The translations under genes were made by a program, and so were the position numbers. The notes under the pieces were generated by a model that saw nothing but the letters and a program-made list of their open reading frames with translations, had not been told where the DNA came from and did not search any database. Shown here piece by piece: positions 871 to 55,660 of a DNA stretch of 64,000 bases. Location of the stretch: positions 1 through 64,000 of the IMG/VR virus record IMGVR_UViG_3300049215_000771; one strand, 5' to 3'. The stretch's first letter is position 1, and each line of letters begins with the position of its first letter.

Positions 871-995
871 GTGGGGATAGTGTAACGGCAGCACGGGAAA
901 AACAGTCTCAGCGCCAATTTGTCCTACGGGAATGCTTAGTTGGGATTACATTCCATTCGGAGGACCAAGTGTAGGTTCAACTCCTACTCCCCACA
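871..995 (+). ncRNA. tRNA-scaffolded Y-RNA-like chimera, copy 1
   Basis: Acceptor GTGGGGA/TCCCCAC, D arm, T arm GTAGG-TTCAACT-CCTAC; anticodon arm replaced by AGTCTCAGCGCCAATTTG-TCC-TACG-GGA-ATGCTTAGTTGGGATTACAT. Confidence 0.75.
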
Positions 996-1018
996 CTTAC
1001 AAGAAAGGAAAGTGAAAT

Positions 1019-4871: not shown

Positions 4872-4970
4872 GCCGGCGAAGCCCGATTGGTAGGGCATCT
4901 TCTCTTCGCTATTTGTCCTTCGGGAATGATTGAAGGGATTACATTGTAGGTTCGACTCCTATCGCCGGCT
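4872..4970 (+). ncRNA. tRNA-scaffolded Y-RNA-like chimera, copy 2 (minimal)
   Basis: GCCGGCG/CGCCGGC acceptor, D and T arms; insert TCTCTTCG-CTATTTG-TCC-TTCG-GGA-ATGAT-TGAAGGGA-TTACAT. Confidence 0.72.
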
Positions 4971-4995
4971 CTCGCCTCACAGGAGAAAGTAGAGA

Positions 4996-5984: not shown

Positions 5985-6221
5985 ATGATGAACGGGCCGG
6001 ATTACAGCGACAACTGCCCCGATTGTGGGGAACCGCTGGCAGTACACCGGGGAGTGGTCCCCCTGACTGCTACAAGGTACTGTGCGAGTTGTAACTGGTG
6101 CGAAGTCACTGACGGCGACCGCCAGGCCAACGCCAGGGAAGATTGGTACGTTCGGAATGTGCGAAACAGGGAAGACAACAAGATCGTCATGGATGAAGAC
6201 GATGAATATGATGGTGGGTAG
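5985..6221 (+). CDS. Zn-ribbon hypothetical protein
   Basis: CPDC...CASC. Confidence 0.55.
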   Translation: MMNGPDYSDNCPDCGEPLAVHRGVVPLTATRYCASCNWCEVTDGDRQANAREDWYVRNVRNREDNKIVMDEDDEYDGG

Positions 6222-6336
6222 CTCAGTGGTAGAGCGACGTAAAAAGTCTCAGCGCCAATTTGTCCTTCGGGAATGCTTAGTTGGGATTACATGCCATTTA
6301 AGCCGTAGGTCGCAGGTTCAACTCCTGCCCCACCAG
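6212..6336 (+). ncRNA. tRNA-scaffolded Y-RNA-like chimera, copy 3
   Basis: TGGTGGG/CCCACCA acceptor, TAGCTCAGTGGTAGAGC D arm, GCAGG-TTCAACT-CCTGC T arm; same ~50-nt core as copy 1. Confidence 0.75.
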
Positions 6337-6338
6337 CT

Positions 6339-12097: not shown

Positions 12098-12351
12098 AAC
12101 TTTTCTGCGTCAGTTGTTTGATTCGGAACACCAGACAGGCCATGTCTGGTTACATCTTCGCTGACGATGAAGAAGAAGCCCGGAAGATATTTCGACAATA
12201 CCTTCCAGTTGAACATGACATCGTGGTAGACGAGATCGAACAGGAGAAGGGTCTGCTGACGATGGTGACGAACGACCGGGCGGTACTGTTGAAGTATTAC
12301 CCGAAAACAACCGATAGGTGTACTGGAGGCACACAGCCCTGCGAAGGCTGA
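12094..12351 (+). CDS. hypothetical protein
   Basis: ATGA coupling. Confidence 0.5.
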   Translation: MKLFCVSCLIRNTRQAMSGYIFADDEEEARKIFRQYLPVEHDIVVDEIEQEKGLLTMVTNDRAVLLKYYPKTTDRCTGGTQPCEG

Positions 12352-12379
12352 GGAGCGGGTTCGACTCCCGCATCGGTTA
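12309..12379 (+). tRNA. tRNA-Arg(GCG)
   Basis: CAGCC-CTGCGAA-GGCTG; AACCGAT/ATCGGTT acceptor. Confidence 0.82.
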
Positions 12380-12380
12380 C

Positions 12381-12468
12381 TGCGACCAAATGCCAGAAGG
12401 GATTACATTCATTTGATAAGTGAAATGCTGGCCTAGCCAGCTAGTCTCTTCACCAGTTGTTGGTCGCA
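12381..12468 (+). ncRNA. free-standing Y-RNA-like element A (no tRNA body)
   Basis: TGCGACCAA/TTGGTCGCA terminal stem; ATGCCA-GAAGGGA-TTACAT...AG-TCTCTTC-ACCAGTTG; T-run follows. Confidence 0.7.
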
Positions 12469-12492
12469 ATTTTCCAACACGGGGCCGGAACA

Positions 12493-12834
12493 GTGGCGGT
12501 TAAAAGGAAAACGGTCGAATGTGAGTGTGGCGAAGTTTTCAACGACCTGCGCACTCATCTCCTGGGCAACCTAATCTTTGGTCCCTGGAAGGCCAAAACG
12601 CATCGTGTGAGGGAAACAAAGTCCAAAAGCGGTGGCGATATACTTGTCGCCGTGTGGGAACGAACAGTAGAATGTGGGAAGTGCGGCGGCGAACTGCTGA
12701 AGGAAAAACGACAGTACGAGTTGTCACCACCAGCAGATGTGACAAAACCAGAACCAATCAGCTACTACAGCAGTAGGGAGTTGATTGTCCGAGGGTCCGA
12801 GGGAGCAGATGGAATAATTCGGATGACGGCGTAG
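12493..12834 (+). CDS. Zn-ribbon hypothetical protein
   Basis: VECECGE...VECGKCG; start uncertain. Confidence 0.5.
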   Translation: MAVKRKTVECECGEVFNDLRTHLLGNLIFGPWKAKTHRVRETKSKSGGDILVAVWERTVECGKCGGELLKEKRQYELSPPADVTKPEPISYYSSRELIVRGSEGADGIIRMTA

Positions 12835-12844
12835 ATAGATTGAT

Positions 12845-12915
12845 GCCCGGTGGGTGTGACGGAAGCACGCAGCGCCTCGAACGCTGTAGAACGGGTTCGA
12901 CTCCTGTACCGGGTG
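12845..12915 (+). tRNA. tRNA-Arg(TCG), C33 variant
   Basis: CAGCG-CCTCGAA-CGCTG. Confidence 0.8.
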
Positions 12916-12988
12916 CTAAAGGTCGAGCATTTAAGTTCCTACGAGTAATCGTAGGCAGACTCTTTCTCGACCTTGAATCAGCGAGTGT

Positions 12989-13078
12989 ATTGTGGTCCAA
13001 ATGCTAAGGTGGGATTACATCTTTTCCAACAAGAAGAAGCCGAAAGGCAGTCTCATCACCAATTTGTTGGACCACAAT
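12989..13078 (+). ncRNA. free-standing Y-RNA-like element B (no tRNA body)
   Basis: ATTGTGGTCCAA/TTGGACCACAAT terminal stem; ATGCTAA-GGTGGGA-TTACAT...GCC-GAAA-GGC-AG-TCTCATC-ACCAATTTG; T-run follows. Confidence 0.72.
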
Positions 13079-13105
13079 TTTTCAACATGAAAGGTAGTGT
13101 GCTAT

Positions 13106-13183
13106 ATGGCTAAAGAAAAATCTCCGAAGAAGGAAAAAAAGAAGCCGAAGAAGAAGGACAAGGACAAGAAGCCGAGCAAGTAA
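13106..13183 (+). CDS. 25-aa Lys-rich peptide
   Basis: MAKEKSPKKEKKKPKKKDKDKKPSK*; AAGG upstream; stop abuts the next tRNA. Confidence 0.55.
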   Translation: MAKEKSPKKEKKKPKKKDKDKKPSK

Positions 13184-13277
13184 GCCCTTGTAGCTCAATT
13201 GGTAGAGCATCTGACTCTTGTGCTAGAAAGCACCCAAGTTAATCAGAGGGTTCAGGGTTCGAGTCCCTGCGAGGGCA
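13184..13277 (+). tRNA. tRNA-Lys(CTT) (or Asn GTT) with 21-nt insertion in the anticodon loop
   Basis: Normal acceptor, D and T arms; TCTGA-CTCTT[GTGCTAGAAAGCACCCAAGTT]AA-TCAGA; A73 favours Lys. Confidence 0.75.
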
Positions 13278-13279
13278 CT

Positions 13280-13707
13280 GCGAAGGAGAACTGGCGTTAC
13301 CTTAACCATCAGGGAGGCTGTTCGATTGTACTTCGCTGTCACAAAACCTCACGCTTCGGCAATGGGGGACAATGCTCGTGTAGCGAAGAAGGCGTAAGCC
13401 CACTGGAAACGGTGAGAGTCCCGTAGCTGTCCATGCTAATGGTCATGGAGAAATTCAGTAGTCCTTGGTCGGAAATCAAGGATGATGCTAGTTGGCGGGG
13501 TGACGGCCCACCAAGGCTGGACCGCATGGACCGGCACATGCAGCTTCGGCGAAGAAATTGTGTCGCCACGAGAGCTAATCGACAATCTCTGGACAAGGCC
13601 CATTCAGGGCGCAAGCCTATCTTCGGATGGCGAGTGTACTCTGACCCGTAGGGATGAAGCGGACTCCTGCCCCGGACTGATTCCGCAGAGAGGGGCCGAT
13701 TAGCAAT
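13280..13707 (+). ncRNA. candidate large structured ncRNA (~430 nt)
   Basis: No convincing ORF; many tetraloop hairpins (GGC-GTAA-GCC, CACTG-GAAA-CGGTG, TCCTTGGT/ATCAAGGA, GGC-GCAA-GCC, TATC-TTCG-GATG). Confidence 0.5.
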
Positions 13708-13709
13708 AT

Positions 13710-13783
13710 GGTGGTGTAGGTTAGCTGGCTAAACCGCCTCTCTCATAAGGAGGAGATCGTGGGTTCGAGTCCCACCACCACTA
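13710..13783 (+). tRNA. tRNA-Met/Ile2(CAT)
   Basis: CCTCT-CTCATAA-GGAGG. Confidence 0.85.
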
Positions 13784-13788
13784 CTACT

Positions 13789-14031
13789 ATGGACGACAAA
13801 ATCTTCAAGGTGCCGGACGCAGGCGAAAACGTCGTTATCCGAATCTTGCCGCCGAAGAAGGTTATGCCGTTTTATGCGACAAGGGTTCACAGGCTGCATC
13901 AGAAGAACAAAGCCTGCCCGATCTGTGAGTACGAGAAGCAATTGTCGGAAAAGCAGAAAGCCAATGGCGCAGGTGGAAGGAAGAAGAAGCGCTGGAGGAA
14001 TATCGACGAGCCTTGGGAGGCTTCGTCGTAG
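13789..14031 (+). CDS. gp32-like SSB N-terminal fragment with RSIDD-type tag
   Basis: GENVVIRILPP...H...CPICEY then KKKRWRNIDEPWEASS*. Confidence 0.6.
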   Translation: MDDKIFKVPDAGENVVIRILPPKKVMPFYATRVHRLHQKNKACPICEYEKQLSEKQKANGAGGRKKKRWRNIDEPWEASS

Positions 14032-14059
14032 GTCGCCCTTAGCACGAGGAGGAGTCCGA

Positions 14060-14599
14060 ATGAAAACGATTTGGTCTGCTTTTTCCATCGGGATCATCTT
14101 GATCTTGCTGGGTTGTCATCCGACACCCGCCCCCAATGCGACGGCTCAACCGGCCAAGGCAGCACCGGCTGCGGCTGGCGGGCAGAACGCCGTCGAGGAG
14201 CAAGGCAAGTATGTGAATTCGGCGAGCGCCAGGCTCGTCAAACTCATCAACCTGGGCAACGAGGCCGGCTTCAAGTTGCCGCATCACTCGTTCAGCGGCG
14301 GTGGGGGTTGGCTGTCTTCTGGTGAGGACAAGTGGGTGTCGCTGTACACCGTGCGGTTGGAGTCCACCAAGGACTACCGATTCCTGGCGGCGGGCGACAT
14401 GGATGCGAAGGTGTTGAACCTTCAGGTCTGCAACGTGGACGGCAAGGTGTTGGCGAACGATACTGACAATGACAGTCAGGCCGTGCTGAACTTCACGCCG
14501 AAGCAGACGGATCGGTACACCATCAAGATCAGGCTCAGGTCGTCGAAAGGCGGCGAGCAAGCGTTCTGTTTCGCCATGATGATGGAACGCAAACGGTAA
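14060..14599 (+). CDS. putative lipoprotein with PPC-like beta domain
   Basis: Signal peptide ending LLGC; AGDMDAKVLNLQV...F.P....Y.I.I. Confidence 0.65.
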   Translation: MKTIWSAFSIGIILILLGCHPTPAPNATAQPAKAAPAAAGGQNAVEEQGKYVNSASARLVKLINLGNEAGFKLPHHSFSGGGGWLSSGEDKWVSLYTVRLESTKDYRFLAAGDMDAKVLNLQVCNVDGKVLANDTDNDSQAVLNFTPKQTDRYTIKIRLRSSKGGEQAFCFAMMMERKR

Positions 14600-14630: not shown

Positions 14631-14702
14631 GGGCGTTTAGCTCAGTGGTAGAGCGCCTGGATCACACCCAGGAGGCCGCTGGTTCAATCCCAGCAACGCC
14701 CA
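14631..14702 (+). tRNA. tRNA-Val(CAC)
   Basis: Cloverleaf; CCTGG-ATCACAC-CCAGG. Confidence 0.9.
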
Positions 14703-14779
14703 CTTCCGATGATACGCTGTAGCGTGTCGTCAGGCTGAAACAACAGCGTATTGGCCGCAATGCGACCGATGGGAAGTTA

Positions 14780-14904
14780 GGCCGGGTAGTGTAACGGTAG
14801 CACGGGTAAAAGCAGTCTCAGCGCCAATTTGTCCTACGGGAATGCTTAGTTGGGATTACATCCATTACCAGGACCAAGTACAGGTTCAATTCCTGTCCCG
14901 GCCT
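14780..14904 (+). ncRNA. tRNA-scaffolded Y-RNA-like chimera, copy 4
   Basis: GGCCGGG/CCCGGCC acceptor, D and T arms; core identical to copy 1. Confidence 0.75.
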
Positions 14905-14920
14905 CTGTAGGAACACAACG

Positions 14921-15918: not shown

Positions 15919-15991
15919 TCCCAGGTAGCTCAGTTGGTAGAGCGGCTGACTGTTAATCAGCATGTCGGGGGTTCGAGTCCCTCCCTGGGAG
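15919..15991 (+). tRNA. tRNA-Asn(GTT)
   Basis: Canonical cloverleaf; GCTGA-CTGTTAA-TCAGC. Confidence 0.95.
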
Positions 15992-25429: not shown

Positions 25430-25614
25430 AGAGCGCAGGCAGCAGTTGTTGGATGTCGTTCAGAAATACAACGACATGATGCGGGCCGACACGAAGGACA
25501 TGACCAACGAGGAGCGTGTGTTCTTCATGGAGTGTCATATCGAGGCCATCAGCAAGCCGTTGGAAATGTTCAAAGGGGCCGTGGCAAAAGGCCAAGGGGA
25601 CAAGAAATAAAATT

Positions 25615-25716
25615 GGGCGGGTAGCTCAGTGGCAGAGCGGCGATGACGCTGGACGGTTTTATAGTTGCCGGTTGCAGCTAATCGCAAGGTCGCTGGTTCA
25701 AATCCAGCCCCGCCCA
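25615..25716 (+). ncRNA. tRNA-like RNA with extended anticodon arm
   Basis: GGGCGGG/CCCGCCC, canonical D and T arms; GCGAT..ATCGC encloses ~36 nt instead of 7. Confidence 0.65.
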
Positions 25717-25784
25717 TTCGGTCAATTACTTTAACCCCTCCTGGAGCCAGGCCGTCCCAGGAGAAATCAAAACCGGCCAGGTGA

Positions 25785-27216: not shown

Positions 27217-27314
27217 GGGAGCGTGGTGTAAAGGTAGCACACGAGACTTATAATCTCGGCCAAACGGTAGCGCCTGATTAGCGCTAGGTGAGGGTTCAAG
27301 TCCTTCCGCTCCTA
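27217..27314 (+). tRNA. tRNA-Ile(TAT) with oversized variable region
   Basis: CGAGA-CTTATAA-TCTCG; ~31-nt variable region with TAGCGC/GCGCTA hairpin. Confidence 0.75.
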
Positions 27315-27498
27315 CTGAGGATCATCATGACGGACAAGCAGCAACACACGATCCGGGTGGCTCTCAACTTCCTTTCTGAGCAATTGGATGTTGGTGGAAA
27401 AACACCGGAACAAGTGCAGCACTTGCGACAACTCGGCCTCATGTGGCTGGGGAATTGTCCGTTGTCGAAAGAAGATGTTGAAAATGCTATGAAAGTAT

Positions 27499-32077: not shown

Positions 32078-33943
32078 ATGGCAAACAAGAATCTGTTCAG
32101 CAAGCCGGGCGCACAGGGCCAGCATGTCGGTAGCGTTCCGAACGCCGACACCAAGAACGAGGCTGGCGGCAAGGCTTATTCCATGTCGAACGAGGCTGCC
32201 CTGGCGCAGTTCGTGGCGACTTCGTGCCTCAACGGTACGTTCCACACGTCGGCCAAGGATCAGCTTGATACCGTCAAGAAGCTGCTCGCCGGCTGCACCC
32301 CGGAGTTCATCGGCAAGGTTGCCATCTACGGTCGCCAGAGCGCCTTCATGAAGGATTTGCCGGCATTGTGCATCAGCCATCTGGCTGCCGACAACGGTGG
32401 CGGCAAGAACGCTGGTGATCCGTCCCGTCGTTCCGCCCCGTCGTGGACGGGTGGTCCGACCACGCCTGAGCAGGAGGCGAAGCAGGAAGTTCTCAACAAG
32501 GTTTTCCCGCACGTCATTGATTCTGGCACGATGGTCCGTAACTTCGTGCAGATGATCCGTTCCGGCGTGCTGGGCCGCAAGTCGCTGGGCTACAGCCTCC
32601 GTCACCTGGTTCGCCAGTGGTTCGAGAACCGCAGCCCGGCTACGATCTTCCACAACAGCATCGGCAACAACCCGACGCTGGGCGAAGTGATCCGTATCGC
32701 CCGTCCGAAGCCGAACACCCCGGAGAAGGCGGCTTTGTTCGCCTACCTGACGGGGGCGAAGGTCGTTGATGACGCCGAGGGGAAGGTACTCCGTACCTAC
32801 TTCAAGGACGACAGCGACGGCCAGGTGAAGGTTGCCTACGAACACCCGTTCGCCAACCTGCCGCAGATCGTGCAGCAGTTCGAGGCGTGGAAGGCGGACC
32901 AGACGCTTCCTCAGCCGAAGCTGAACTTCCGTTTCCTGGACGGCATCAAGAAGCTGTCTACTGCCGAGTGGACGGAAATCGCTCGGAACGCCAACTGGTT
33001 GACCACGTTGAAGTCCATGAACACCTACAAGGAGCATGGCGTATTCGATCAGCCTGGTATGGTGGAACTGATCTCGGCTCGGCTGGCTGACGCCAACGAA
33101 GTCGCCAAGGTCCGGGTTTTCCCGTACCAGATTCTCATCGCCTACCTTGCCTCCGAGGGCAAGGCTCCGCAGAAGGTCCGTGATGCTTTGCACGACGCAC
33201 TGGAAGCTGCTACTCGCAACGTGCCGGTGTTGACGGGCAAGGTCTACATCTGTGTGGACGTGTCGGGTTCGATGACGACGGGTCGGGTTACGGGCGACCG
33301 TGGCTCGGCGACGACGGCGGCTCGTTGTATCGACGTGGCGGCGCTGTACGCAGCCTCGCTGCTTCGTGTCAACAAGAGCGCCGAAGTCATTCCGTTCGAG
33401 GTAGGTGTCGTCCTGCCGAGCAAGCTGACGTTGGAACCACGGGACACCGTGATGACCAACGCCCGCAAGCTGGCGTCCATCGGCGGCGGTGGTACGAACT
33501 GTTCGGCTCCGCTGAACATGCTCAACCAGCGCAACGCCAAGGGCGATGTCGTTGTCTTCGTCAGCGACTACGAGTCGTGGGCCGATGGTCCGAACGCTCA
33601 CAACGGCAAGGCTACGGCCATGCTGGAGCAGTGGGCCATCTTCAAGAAGCGCAACCCGGACGCCAAGCTGGTTTGCATCGACTTGACGCCTCGTGCCAAC
33701 CACCAGGTTGTCGAGCGCCCGGACATCCTCCAGGTTGGCGGTTTCTCCGACAACGTGTTCAACGTCGTGGCTCGGTTCGCCGAGAGCGGCTGGGACAAGA
33801 ACTTCTGGCTCCAGGAGATCAACAAGATCGACCTGGACGCCTTGGGCGACCTGTGTGGCTCGAAGGCGAAGAAGCAAGATGCAGTGCAGGTTGAAGTCAC
33901 CGAGGCTGTCGGCGGTGATGAAGAGTCCGAAGAACAGCAGTAA
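32078..33943 (+). CDS. Ro60/Rsr TROVE + vWA domain RNA-binding protein
   Basis: NEAGG.AY...LAQ...FPYQ.L.AY...VDVSGSM...GGGGTNCSAPL...VSD.ESW...GGFSD.VF. Confidence 0.93.
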   Translation: MANKNLFSKPGAQGQHVGSVPNADTKNEAGGKAYSMSNEAALAQFVATSCLNGTFHTSAKDQLDTVKKLLAGCTPEFIGKVAIYGRQSAFMKDLPALCISHLAADNGGGKNAGDPSRRSAPSWTGGPTTPEQEAKQEVLNKVFPHVIDSGTMVRNFVQMIRSGVLGRKSLGYSLRHLVRQWFENRSPATIFHNSIGNNPTLGEVIRIARPKPNTPEKAALFAYLTGAKVVDDAEGKVLRTYFKDDSDGQVKVAYEHPFANLPQIVQQFEAWKADQTLPQPKLNFRFLDGIKKLSTAEWTEIARNANWLTTLKSMNTYKEHGVFDQPGMVELISARLADANEVAKVRVFPYQILIAYLASEGKAPQKVRDALHDALEAATRNVPVLTGKVYICVDVSGSMTTGRVTGDRGSATTAARCIDVAALYAASLLRVNKSAEVIPFEVGVVLPSKLTLEPRDTVMTNARKLASIGGGGTNCSAPLNMLNQRNAKGDVVVFVSDYESWADGPNAHNGKATAMLEQWAIFKKRNPDAKLVCIDLTPRANHQVVERPDILQVGGFSDNVFNVVARFAESGWDKNFWLQEINKIDLDALGDLCGSKAKKQDAVQVEVTEAVGGDEESEEQQ

Positions 33944-34404: not shown

Positions 34405-34773
34405 ATGAGGCATATGATGCACGCTAAGTTGGTGTACGAACACGCCGGTCGTCCCACTTGGACGATCTGTGATGTTATCTTGTACGAGCCGAACGACGAG
34501 ACGGCGAAGGTTATTGCCGTGTTCACGCAGCTTGATGCCCACCGGGGCGTGAGCATCACCAACTCCGTCGAGAGCGCCTGTGCCGCTTTCTGTGAAGATC
34601 GCAACGTATACCCTGACCAGTGTGTTTTCATCGAGCGGTATGAACATTCGCCCGAAGACCTGGACATGATTTTTCTCGATGAGTATGGCCAGAATCCTCG
34701 CTGGAAACGTCTTGCAAAGGAGCAATCGGCGGGTATACTAGCTGTTTTGCCCAAACCTAGCCTCGTGGTGTAA
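34405..34773 (+). CDS. hypothetical protein
   Basis: G.SITN..E.......F.E.Y......P.W motif. Confidence 0.6.
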   Translation: MRHMMHAKLVYEHAGRPTWTICDVILYEPNDETAKVIAVFTQLDAHRGVSITNSVESACAAFCEDRNVYPDQCVFIERYEHSPEDLDMIFLDEYGQNPRWKRLAKEQSAGILAVLPKPSLVV

Positions 34774-34888
34774 CGGTAGCACAACGGTCCTCTGAAAAGG
34801 GATAGTCTCGACACTATTTGTCCTTCGGGAATGCCGTTGGGATTACATTCATAATCCGTGTGTCCTGGTTCGAGTCCAGGCGAGGCGA
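34759..34888 (+). ncRNA. tRNA-scaffolded Y-RNA-like chimera, copy 5
   Basis: GCCTCG/CGAGGC acceptor, D and T arms; AGTCTCGAC-ACTATTTG-TCC-TTCG-GGA-ATGCC-GTTGGGA-TTACAT; residual TTCATAA-TCCGT. Confidence 0.75.
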
Positions 34889-34890
34889 CT

Positions 34891-55503: not shown

Positions 55504-55585
55504 GGGGTTATAGCTTAATGGAAGAGTGGCGAGGTAAGGCCCAAGTGGTCCCTCGCAGGTAGGGGTTCGACTCCCCTTAGCTCCA
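55504..55585 (+). ncRNA. tRNA-like RNA with enlarged anticodon loop
   Basis: GGGGTTA/TAGCTCC (Ala-like G3:U70), AGGGG-TTCGACT-CCCCT; GCGAGG..CCTCGC encloses 16 nt. Confidence 0.6.
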
Positions 55586-55660
55586 CTGAATGAAAGGCAT
55601 CCTGATACTTCTGATTCTCTCCCTAATCATCGCCATCACCGCAATCCTGACGAGGAAAAA

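What the first reader, a model, noticed from the sequence alone, without database searches (positions are those of the whole stretch)
13106..13277. tRNA-Lys with a masking insert, directly preceded by a Lys-rich mini-ORF
Seen: the tRNA has 21 extra nt in the anticodon loop. Removing 13220-13240 gives Lys(CTT); removing 13217-13237 gives Asn(GTT). The insert forms GTGCT-AGAA-AGCAC and its AAG can pair with the CTT anticodon. The 25-aa ORF ending at 13183 has 14 Lys codons, 11 of them AAG. Inference: either a protein-spliced mini-intron or nuclease-activated reserve tRNA (tRNA-Lys is the classic PrrC target), with the peptide as a sensor of AAG decoding.
Basis: partly seen in the sequence, partly recalled or inferred. 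Interest (0 to 1): 0.68.

Follow-up and report, generated by a model that had tools for sequence, protein, structure and literature searches.

The report
Anticodon-masked tRNA-Lys in a giant phage
A 532-kb bacteriophage carries one lysine tRNA gene, whose anticodon is buried in a unique 21-base hairpin insert and which sits directly behind a lysine-rich mini-gene; the insert is real and transcribed, but nothing shows that it is ever cut out.

Summary
Window 13184-13277 is a high-scoring, bacterial-type tRNA (A73) with a 28-nt anticodon loop. Removing 21 nt restores a perfect CUCUUAA loop, giving Lys-CUU. Three independent assemblies and two RNA-library contigs carry the insert, so it is not an assembly error.

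The window is the start of a 532,729-bp tailed phage with about 59 tRNA genes. It encodes several aminoacyl-tRNA synthetases, including its own LysRS, and a Ro60-like protein with Y-RNA-like RNAs. It also encodes T4 Rnl1-like and Rnl2-type RNA ligases.

The insert does not qualify as any known intron type:
- It has no bulge-helix-bulge motif.
- The phage has no splicing endonuclease or RtcB.
- 21 nt is far too short for a group I intron.
- It is absent from the one related phage with a comparable tRNA-Lys(CUU) gene and from IMG/VR.

Only unspliced RNA was seen. My best reading is an unspliced, non-decoding, anticodon-masked tRNA-like transcript, either recently disabled or a decoy (0.45). Activation by cutting and re-ligation is a live rival (0.25).

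The mini-ORF's AAG bias matches genome usage. However, in a related 527-kb phage the ORF just upstream of tRNA-Lys(CUU) uses AAG 26 times and AAA never (p about 1e-10).

The parts
12985..13095 (+). Y RNA-like (YrlB-like) hairpin RNA just upstream of the mini-ORF. It carries AAUGCU..GGGAUUACAU and AGUCUCA..CCAAUUUGU closed by GUGGUCC/GGACCAC.
   Evidence: Rfam RF02565 YrlB at 12989-13078: 27.5 bits, E=0.0032, below the gathering score. Fold z=-2.5. The same module recurs, circularly permuted, inside tRNA-like genes.
13087..13110 (+). Translation-initiation motif ATGAAAGGTAG-N8-ATGGC of the mini-ORF.
   Evidence: The 11-mer occurs only twice on the + strand of the 532-kb genome. The other copy lies at the same distance before the ATG of the Ro60-like gene at 32078.
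13106..13183 (+). Lys-rich mini-ORF MAKEKSPKKEKKKPKKKDKDKKPSK (14 Lys: 11 AAG, 3 AAA). Its TAA stop abuts tRNA base 1.
   Evidence: RNA-library contigs join it to the tRNA.
13184..13277 (+). Bacterial-type tRNA-Lys(CUU) gene with a 28-nt anticodon loop. A73 discriminator, no encoded CCA.
   Evidence: Rfam 62.2 bits; ARAGORN Lys(ctt) i(35,21); A73 versus G73 of tRNA-Asn.
13220..13240 (+). The 21-nt insert, in one of three equivalent registers. It holds the hairpin GTGCT-AGAA-AGCAC, a CC bulge, AAG paired to the CTT anticodon, then TT.
   Evidence: It is unique in the genome and has no significant similarity to the mini-ORF.
32078..33943 (+). Ro60/Rsr-like protein gene. This is context: it is the presumed partner of the Y RNA-like RNAs and shares its start motif with the mini-ORF.
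   Evidence: Pfam PF25045 vWA_Ro60 at 1.4e-13, plus a weak TROVE match.

Best explanation
This is a genuine, transcribed tRNA-Lys(CUU) gene in the tRNA array of a jumbo myophage of bacteria. A lineage-specific 21-nt hairpin has been inserted into its anticodon loop.

Shown:
- The cloverleaf and every loop residue flanking the insert are intact.
- The insert extends the anticodon stem into an interrupted helix that pairs C34-U36 with AAG.
- The RNA exists unspliced and contiguous with the upstream mini-ORF.

Inferred:
- RNase P, RNase Z and CCA addition would release a roughly 94-nt tRNA-like RNA that cannot decode.
- With U35 and U36 buried, LysRS probably charges it poorly.
- The insert is not a conventional intron. 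The molecule is therefore either a recently disabled tRNA gene or a non-decoding tRNA-scaffold RNA.
- The second option fits a phage that already builds several RNAs on tRNA scaffolds (Y-RNA-like chimeras). A possible role is as a decoy for enzymes that attack or bind tRNA-Lys.

The Lys-rich mini-ORF is probably a real small ORF, because its start motif is shared with the Ro60-like gene. Its position may reflect a recurrent link between AAG-rich ORFs and tRNA-Lys(CUU), not a sensor that has been demonstrated.
For: - RNA-library contigs X7 13011-13307 and X11 13039-13248 carry the insert with 0 differences and 0 gaps, and no joint was seen.
- The MFE shows a 2x4 internal loop, a 3-bp helix, a 2-nt bulge and a 5-bp helix, which is not a bulge-helix-bulge.
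- The phage has no tRNA_int_endo and no RtcB.
- The insert is unique in the genome.
- The related 527-kb phage G002 has tRNA-Lys(CUU) with a normal 7-nt loop.
- A pattern for an 8-38-nt insert after CTT in a tRNA-Lys frame finds nothing else in IMG/VR.
- The other insert-bearing tRNAs of this genome carry their inserts at different loop positions (31/32, 34-37, 37/38), so no single cutting rule fits them.
- Five tRNA-like genes here carry a Y-RNA-like module in place of the anticodon loop, next to a Ro60-like gene.
Against: - Precise removal restores a textbook CUCUUAA loop, and the body shows no decay.
- This is the phage's only tRNA-Lys gene, yet the phage encodes its own LysRS.
- The fold (CU free, anticodon paired to the 3' end of the insert, hairpin, 3-4 free nt) matches real tRNA-Lys(CUU) introns of eukaryotes, archaea and giant-virus arrays.
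- RNA ligases and a kinase that could reseal a cut anticodon loop are present.
- The RNA evidence comes from assembled contigs, which drop rare or short species such as mature tRNA.
- All sampled copies are clonal, so selection on the insert cannot be measured.
Confidence: 0.45

Rival explanations
1. Masked reserve pre-tRNA. Two endonucleolytic cuts in the extended anticodon arm, made by a host anticodon nuclease or an unidentified phage nuclease, release the 21-mer. The phage's end-healing kinase and its Rnl1-like or Rnl2-type ligase then rejoin the halves into a working tRNA-Lys(CUU), which the phage LysRS charges.
For: - A T4 Rnl1-like ligase lies at about 102.2-103.5 kb.
- There are three PF09414 ligases, one adjacent to an AAA_33 kinase beside the second tRNA block.
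- The phage encodes LysRS.
- This is the only tRNA-Lys gene.
- Exact excision gives a perfect loop, and both junctions read N|UU.
- The fold resembles an intron.
- A second phage-like contig, L202, has tRNA-Lys(CTT) with A73 and CCA plus a 27-nt insert at the same place.
Against: - No spliced form was seen.
- No nuclease candidate was found: EndA and PrrC-type AAA_13 are absent.
- There is no BHB motif.
- Cuts at the two PrrC-like 33|34 positions would give a GUU anticodon, not CUU.
- The insert is not conserved in the relative G002 and has no counterpart in IMG/VR.
- RNA repair genes are common in jumbo phages for other reasons (PMC7824862).
Confidence: 0.25
2. Translation-coupled control. 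The AAG-rich ORF that ends at the first base of the tRNA reports the supply of Lys-tRNA(CUU). Fast translation drives ribosomes onto the tRNA's 5' end and blocks its folding and RNase P cleavage. Stalling at early Lys codons leaves the tRNA free to be processed.
For: - The only strongly Lys-rich small ORF in 532 kb abuts the only tRNA-Lys gene.
- It has a start motif shared with a real gene.
- It is co-transcribed with the tRNA in RNA-library contigs.
- In G002, the ORF ending 5-6 nt before tRNA-Lys(CUU) uses 26 AAG and 0 AAA. The genome baseline for AAG is 0.36-0.42, and the same ORF otherwise uses A/T-ending codons (GAA 18, GAG 5). This gives p of about 1e-10 to 2e-12.
- No other tRNA shows a comparable effect, with one weaker oddity at Val-CAC.
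Against: - AAG use in the window's mini-ORF equals the genome bias (p=0.23).
- The tract is purine-rich, so all its frames are open anyway.
- No terminator or alternative-hairpin switch was found.
- L124 and L202 have tRNA-Lys(CTT) with upstream ORFs that are neither Lys-rich nor AAG-biased.
- Homologues of the G002 ORF occur unlinked to tRNA-Lys, with 10 AAA to 16 AAG and 5 AAA to 18 AAG.
- Avoidance of slippery A-runs in Lys-rich tails could explain part of the bias.
Confidence: 0.15
3. The gene was captured, intron included, from a eukaryote, archaeon or giant virus. In a bacterial host the intron is an unspliceable relic.
For: - Metagenome hits to the same pattern are almost all archaeal or eukaryotic tRNA-Lys(CTT) genes with introns ending in AAGA or AAGT before AATC.
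- In giant-virus-like tRNA arrays (L197, L227, L169), only tRNA-Lys(CTT) carries a 22-23-nt intron, with the same fold.
Against: - The body is bacterial in type: A73, an 8-nt D-loop and a TTCGAGT T-loop.
- Its identity to the archaeal, fungal and bacterial hits is equally about 60 of 73 positions.
- The nucleotide after CTT is G, so the canonical 37/38 cut would give G37.
- The giant-virus copies have U73.
Confidence: 0.07

Closest known systems
Protein-spliced introns of eukaryotic, archaeal and giant-virus tRNA-Lys(CUU) genes
   Same: - A short insert (about 9-38 nt) follows the anticodon.
- The anticodon is paired to the 3' end of the insert, with an internal hairpin and a few free nucleotides before the 3' stem strand.
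   Different: - The host is bacterial: the phage has a portal and tail sheath, RRF, an M23 peptidase, a lipobox protein and bacterial-type aaRS.
- There is no BHB motif, endonuclease or RtcB in the phage.
- The canonical 37/38 position would leave G37.
- The tRNA body is bacterial-type with A73.
T4 tRNA-Lys restriction and repair (host PrrC anticodon nuclease; phage Pnkp and Rnl1)
   Same: - tRNA-Lys is the molecule at stake.
- The phage encodes an Rnl1-family ligase, other RNA ligases and a P-loop kinase.
   Different: - In T4 an ordinary host tRNA is nicked once and resealed. Here a phage tRNA carries 21 extra bases that would need two cuts.
- PrrC acts on the UUU isoacceptor.
- No nuclease was identified.
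Phage tRNAs with anticodon-loop changes that escape host tRNA nucleases (T5; PMC10264068, and the PARIS commentary PMC11455837)
   Same: A phage-encoded tRNA, Lys among them, has an altered anticodon loop in a setting of defence and counter-defence.
   Different: Those are point changes in a 7-nt loop that still decodes. Here the loop is 28 nt and the anticodon is base-paired.
YrlA and YrlB Y RNA-like RNAs bound by bacterial Ro60/Rsr, also found in mycobacteriophages (PMC4201824)
   Same: - They are non-decoding RNAs built on a tRNA-like scaffold and processed by tRNA enzymes.
- This window holds several such chimeras, a YrlB-like RNA 10 nt upstream of the mini-ORF, and a Ro60-like gene.
   Different: - The tRNA-Lys insert has no Ro60-binding module.
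- It keeps all the anticodon-loop residues.
Leader-peptide attenuators of amino-acid operons (trpL, hisL, pheL; established knowledge)
   Same: A very short ORF, rich in codons for one amino acid, sits directly upstream of a gene for that amino acid's decoding or supply.
   Different: - The downstream gene is a tRNA.
- No terminator/antiterminator pair was found.
- The codon bias in this window is not above the genome level.

Membership tests
tRNA (Rfam RF00005) | Cloverleaf with conserved D and T arms and acceptor stem | tested here: met
   62.2 bits against a gathering score of 29. All four stems are paired.
tRNA (Rfam RF00005) | Seven-nucleotide anticodon loop with a free anticodon | tested here: not met
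   The loop is 28 nt, and C34-U36 are paired to AAG in the MFE of the arm.
tRNA-Lys (bacterial identity set) | U35, U36 and discriminator A73 | tested here: met
   CTT, with A73. The phage's tRNA-Asn has G73, and Myrna tRNA-Lys(CTT) has A73.
tRNA-Lys (bacterial identity set) | Aminoacylation with lysine | not testable with these tools
   A phage LysRS gene exists, but there are no charging data.
Archaeal/eukaryal protein-spliced tRNA intron | Bulge-helix-bulge: two 3-nt bulges on opposite strands separated by 4 bp | tested here: not met
   The fold gives a 2x4 internal loop, a 3-4-bp helix, a 2-nt bulge and a 5-bp hairpin. Cuts in those bulges would not leave a 7-nt loop.
Archaeal/eukaryal protein-spliced tRNA intron | Canonical 37/38 position giving a normal loop | tested here: not met
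   Position 37/38 would give CUCUUGA, with G37. Only the 34/35 to 36/37 registers give CUCUUAA.
Archaeal/eukaryal protein-spliced tRNA intron | Splicing endonuclease (PF01974) and RtcB or Trl1-type ligase available | tested here: inconclusive
   PF01974 and PF01139 are absent from the phage, while Rnl1-like and Rnl2-type ligases are present. The host genome is unknown.
Archaeal/eukaryal protein-spliced tRNA intron | A spliced product exists | tested here: inconclusive
   Only the unspliced form appears in RNA-library contigs and no joint was seen. Contigs cannot show absence.
Group I self-splicing tRNA intron (bacterial and phage type) | Catalytic core of more than 200 nt (P3-P9) | tested here: not met
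   The insert is 21 nt, and there is no Rfam intron match in the window.
Leader-peptide attenuator | Short ORF enriched in the regulatory codon | tested here: met
   14 Lys in 25 codons, a composition unique in the genome. The AAG share itself is not above genome usage.
Leader-peptide attenuator | Alternative terminator/antiterminator structures | tested here: not met
   There is no terminator-like site on the + strand in 12300-14100.
Leader-peptide attenuator | Conserved linkage in relatives | tested here: inconclusive
   The linkage is present in G002 (26 AAG, 0 AAA) and absent in L124 and L202.
T4-type tRNA anticodon-loop repair | Rnl1-family ligase plus an end-healing kinase | tested here: met
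   PF09511 at 60.6 bits; AAA_33 kinase adjacent to a PF09414 ligase. A phosphatase domain was not examined.
T4-type tRNA anticodon-loop repair | Nuclease cleavage of this RNA at defined sites | not testable with these tools
   The phage has no PrrC-type AAA_13, and the host is unknown.
Y RNA-like RNA (YrlB), for the element at 12985-13095 | Match to the family model | tested here: inconclusive
   27.5 bits against a gathering score of 97, E=0.0032. It shares GGAUUACAU, AAUGCU and AUUUGU with the model consensus.
Y RNA-like RNA (YrlB), for the element at 12985-13095 | Encoded near a Ro60/Rsr gene on the same strand | tested here: met
   The Ro60-like gene at 32078-33943 is on the same strand, but 19 kb away. 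A tRNA-like chimera with the same module lies 0.8 kb after it, at 34759-34889.

The most novel reading that the evidence does not exclude
A bacteriophage keeps its only tRNA-Lys(CUU) as a latent precursor whose anticodon is hidden in a eukaryote-like mini-intron. The phage activates it by a cut-and-religate step that uses its own RNA-repair enzymes. An AAG-rich leader ORF fused to the tRNA's 5' end tunes its release according to AAG decoding. This would be the first protein-dependent, non-group-I tRNA splicing in a bacterial system, tied to the arms race over tRNA-Lys.
Probability: 0.15. Interest if true: 0.85.

Novelty: new variant of a known kind. Interest (0 to 1): 0.5.

Why it matters
tRNA-Lys is a favoured target of bacterial anti-phage nucleases (PrrC, RloC, PARIS), and phage tRNAs are now seen as counter-measures.

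A phage tRNA-Lys whose anticodon is physically masked is a concrete test case. This phage also encodes LysRS, RNA ligases and a Ro60/Y-RNA system. The molecule is either dead weight, a decoy, or the first short protein-processed tRNA intron in the bacterial world. One tRNA-seq or Northern experiment would tell these apart.

Separately, the AAG-only ORF in front of tRNA-Lys(CUU) in a related megaphage is a clean, codon-specific signal. It points to functional coupling between a tRNA gene and its upstream reading frame.

If the insert is simply a recent disabling insertion, the finding is ordinary.

Tried and rejected
- Assembly artefact: rejected. Three assemblies and the RNA contigs agree.
- Asn(GTT) reading: rejected on the discriminator base, and because an intact tRNA-Asn exists.
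- Mobile or repeated element: rejected. The insert is unique in the genome.
- Insert copied from the end of the mini-ORF: rejected. The local alignment gives p=0.13.
- AAG excess in the mini-ORF: rejected. It equals genome usage.
- A general rule that ORFs upstream of tRNAs favour the cognate codon: rejected for G000, G002, G003 and G004. The exceptions are Lys-CUU in G002 and a weaker Val-CAC case.
- Close relatives of the locus: none found, whichever neighbour gene was used.
  - Neighbouring methyltransferase, RNase H-like and PurE-like genes gave nothing in IMG/VR.
  - The Ro60-like gene gave one contig with no tRNAs.
  - Exact-protein look-ups returned only identical DNA.
- First IMG/VR pattern (GACTCTTG..CAAGTTAATC): 15 hits, none of them a tRNA.
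- First metagenome pattern: it had a spacing error of mine (11 N instead of 9) and found nothing. The corrected pattern was used.
- Rfam found no YrlA match on the tRNA-like chimera at 34759.
- Rfam found nothing in 13279-13709.
- The homologues of the G002 ORF have no Pfam or PHROG assignment.

Full report
**What the window is**

The 64-kb window is the first part of a 532,729-bp IMG/VR virus record. That record was cut from a 673,178-bp metagenome contig. It comes from moss metagenomes.

The record is a tailed phage: it has a portal protein (phrog_213), a tail sheath (phrog_23) and tail fibres. Several genes point to a bacterial host, namely a ribosome recycling factor, an M23 peptidase, a lipobox protein and bacterial-type synthetases.

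The phage carries about 59 tRNA genes. Roughly 40 lie on the + strand of this window and a second block lies at 472-499 kb. The window also encodes:
- several aminoacyl-tRNA synthetases;
- a Ro60-like protein at 32078-33943.

**Checking the observation**

- The tRNA at 13184-13277 scores 62.2 bits against Rfam tRNA, with the extra bases confined to the anticodon loop.
- ARAGORN with introns allowed draws a perfect cloverleaf for Lys(ctt) with a 21-nt intron.
- Because TT stands at both ends of the insert, three registers (13218-38, 13219-39, 13220-40) give the same product, CUCUUAA.
- The alternative Asn(GUU) reading is formally possible but unlikely. The discriminator is A73, as in Myrna tRNA-Lys(CTT), whereas the phage's own intact tRNA-Asn(GTT) at 15919 has G73.
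- The insert is real DNA. The JGI, ENA/NCBI and Logan assemblies are identical over the region.
- The mini-ORF is as described: 25 aa with 14 Lys (11 AAG, 3 AAA), and its stop codon touches tRNA base 1.

- AAG makes up 65-67% of Lys codons genome-wide, so 11 of 14 is unremarkable (p=0.23).
- Many ordinary ORFs in this array end 0-7 nt before a tRNA.

What does stand out is the ORF's composition and place. It is the only small ORF in the genome with 13 Lys in a 20-aa window (one 80-aa ORF reaches 9), and it sits in front of the only tRNA-Lys gene.

**Is the insert an intron?**

By the defining features of known classes, it is not.
- At 21 nt it cannot be a group I intron, and Rfam sees nothing of the kind.
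- The predicted arm runs stem, CU opposite UUAA (a 2x4 internal loop), the helix CUU(G)/(C)AAG, a CC bulge, then the hairpin GUGCU-AGAA-AGCAC.
- That is not a bulge-helix-bulge. Cuts in its bulges would not leave a 7-nt loop.
- The canonical 37/38 position would leave G37.
- The phage lacks the splicing endonuclease and RtcB.

The RNA evidence shows only the unspliced form.
- In two metatranscriptomes, contigs cover 13011-13307 and 13039-13248 with no differences and no gap. The precursor, joined to the mini-ORF, is therefore present in RNA libraries.
- No joint was found.
- These are assembled contigs. Mature tRNA-sized or rare species would be missed, so absence is not proven.
- No promoter or terminator beyond chance lies between the flanking genes, which fits one long transcript.

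**Comparative evidence on the insert**

The insert is unique in the genome and is not derived from the mini-ORF.

Portal-protein relatives are plentiful. The one complete relative, G002, is 527 kb long, shares 58% portal identity and has 63 tRNAs. Its tRNA-Lys(CUU) has a normal loop plus an extra variable-arm hairpin, on a different body.

I searched for any 8-38-nt insert after CTT in a tRNA-Lys frame.
- The pattern found nothing else in IMG/VR.
- Nearly all of those are archaeal or eukaryotic genes with ordinary introns.
- Some lie in dense tRNA arrays where only tRNA-Lys(CTT) has a 22-23-nt intron: L197, L227 and L169. L197 carries RING-finger and lipase genes, which suggests a giant virus.
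- Those introns fold exactly like the one here.
- One hit, L202, is phage-like. It has Dam methylase and PRPP synthetase genes, and its tRNA has A73 and an encoded CCA. It carries a 27-nt insert at the same place.

The architecture is therefore intron-like, but in bacterial viruses it is very rare and not conserved. Exon identity does not favour a foreign origin, since it is about 60 of 73 positions to hits from all three domains.

**Context within the phage**

Several other tRNA-like genes in the genome have enlarged anticodon loops:
- 25614, with 29 extra nt;
- 55504, with 11 extra nt;
- 89409, an Ile2/Met(CAU)-like tRNA with an intact CUCAUAA loop and 12 extra nt on its 5' side;
- 498892, with 36 extra nt at position 37/38.

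Their inserts sit at different loop positions, so no single ruler-type or motif-type endonuclease rule fits them all.

Five more tRNA-like genes carry a shared module, AGUCUCAGCGCCAAUUUGUCC-UNCG-GGAAUGC..GGGAUUACAU, in place of the anticodon loop.
- The same module appears circularly permuted as free-standing hairpins at about 12381-12470 and 12985-13095.
- The second of these hits Rfam YrlB weakly.
- Together with the Ro60-like gene, this matches the YrlA/YrlB arrangement described for bacteria and mycobacteriophages (PMC4201824).

This phage therefore routinely makes non-decoding RNAs on tRNA scaffolds, which raises the prior that the Lys gene is another one.

Some facts point the other way.
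- The Lys gene keeps every loop residue, so exact excision would restore function.
- The phage has its own class II LysRS.
- It has a T4 Rnl1-like ligase and three PF09414 ligases. One of these lies beside a P-loop kinase next to the second tRNA block.

**The mini-ORF**

Its start region, ATGAAAGGTAG-N8-ATGGC, occurs only twice in the genome. The other copy precedes the Ro60-like gene at the same spacing. A real translation start is therefore plausible.

The strongest support for a link between Lys codons and tRNA-Lys(CUU) comes from G002.
- There, the roughly 190-aa ORF that ends 5-6 nt before tRNA-Lys(CUU) has a Lys-rich tail.
- It uses AAG 26 times and AAA never, in a 41% GC genome where AAG is 36-42% of Lys codons.
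- The same ORF prefers GAA, CAA, GAT and AAT for other amino acids. This gives p of about 1e-10 to 2e-12.

The link is not universal.
- Homologues of that ORF in other phage tRNA arrays are not adjacent to tRNA-Lys and use 10 AAA with 16 AAG, and 5 AAA with 18 AAG.
- tRNA-Lys(CTT) in L124 and in L202 is preceded by ordinary ORFs.
- No general trend toward the cognate codon exists for other tRNAs. The one other oddity is the lipoprotein gene before tRNA-Val(CAC), which uses GTG for 7 of 10 Val codons.

**Verdict**

The interpretation stays open.

| Reading | Confidence |
|---|---|
| Unspliced, anticodon-masked, non-decoding tRNA-like transcript (a recent disabling insertion or a decoy) | 0.45 |
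| Nuclease-plus-ligase activation | 0.25 |
| Translation-coupled control by the mini-ORF (can combine with either reading above) | 0.15 |
| Capture of a foreign intron-bearing gene | 0.07 |

No step of any processing pathway is shown; all are inferred. The decisive data would be read-level RNA evidence for or against the 13219|13241 junction.

Noticed in passing
window 880-1010, 4872-4971, 6212-6337, 14780-14905, 34759-34889; also 12381-12470 and 12985-13095: A family of Y RNA-like RNAs. Five tRNA-like genes carry a conserved roughly 48-nt module (..CCAAUUUGUCC-UNCG-GGAAUGC..GGGAUUACAU) in place of the anticodon loop, an architecture like YrlA. Two free hairpins hold the same module circularly permuted (YrlB-like; Rfam E=0.0032). 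GGGATTACAT occurs 8 times in the genome, all on the + strand.
   Followed up: partly
window 32078-33943: A phage-encoded Ro60/Rsr-like protein (vWA_Ro60 at 1.4e-13, weak TROVE match). Its start motif ATGAAAGGTAG-N8-ATGGC is shared only with the Lys mini-ORF. One 42%-identical relative was found in IMG/VR.
   Followed up: partly
L118 (G002:C1) minus strand 13488-12907, upstream of tRNA-Lys(CTT) at 12901-12819: In a related 527-kb phage (41% GC), the ORF just before tRNA-Lys(CUU) uses 26 AAG and 0 AAA while keeping A/T-ending codons for other amino acids. Homologues elsewhere are less extreme. In L127 a homologue sits next to an RlaP nucleotidyltransferase gene.
   Followed up: partly
window 14060-14599 and tRNA-Val(CAC) 14631-14703: The lipoprotein gene just upstream of tRNA-Val(CAC) uses GTG for 7 of 10 Val codons, against a genome mean of 0.25. 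Only 0.5% of ORFs reach that share.
   Followed up: partly
window 13470-13520 (inside called ORF 13482-13703): A stretch resembling 16S rRNA (GCTAGTTGGCGGGGTGACGGCCCACCAAGGC). It attracts high-depth foreign contigs whose continuations read like 16S (..ACGGGTAGCTGGTCTGAG). Rfam finds no family match in 13279-13709.
   Followed up: partly
window 27217-27315; L117 5633-5731 (G002): A tRNA-Ile(UAU) with a normal anticodon arm but two extra hairpins in the variable region is conserved between the two megaphages. G002 also has Lys, Asn, Cys and Glu tRNAs with an extra GNRA-capped hairpin in the variable arm.
   Followed up: partly
window 25614-25717 and 55504-55586; G000 89409-89493 and 498892-499001; L116 9941-10024; L121 2018-2123: Further tRNA-like genes have 11-36 extra nucleotides in the anticodon loop, at differing positions. 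The 55504 type has a counterpart in G002 with a different loop content. G004 has a tRNA-Leu(UAA) with a 22-nt insert.
   Followed up: partly
G000 121393-121540, 80837-80930; window 25614-25717: Two tandem tRNAs have the amber anticodon CUA, and a SeC-like tRNA has UCA. ARAGORN also reads UUA in the odd tRNA at 25614. Stop-codon reassignment or suppression in this phage was not examined.
   Followed up: no
G000 about 248.1-249.7 kb, 450.2-451.8 kb, 93.4-94.1 kb, 102.2-103.5 kb and 502.0-503.6 kb: The phage encodes its own LysRS and AspRS, a T4 Rnl1-like ligase and three PF09414 RNA ligases. One of these ligases lies next to an AAA_33/KTI12-like kinase beside the second tRNA block.
   Followed up: partly
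L227 (29 tRNAs in 5.3 kb), L197, L169, L205: These are dense metagenomic tRNA arrays of eukaryote-virus type (RING-finger, lipase and nanos-finger genes; Ile-AAU and Ala-AGC tRNAs). In them tRNA-Lys(CUU) is the only, or nearly the only, intron-bearing tRNA.
   Followed up: partly
whole record: The 532,729-bp 'provirus' record starts about 710 bp into a 673,178-bp contig. The remaining roughly 140 kb, which the virus caller cut off as host, was not examined, so the true genome may be larger.
   Followed up: no
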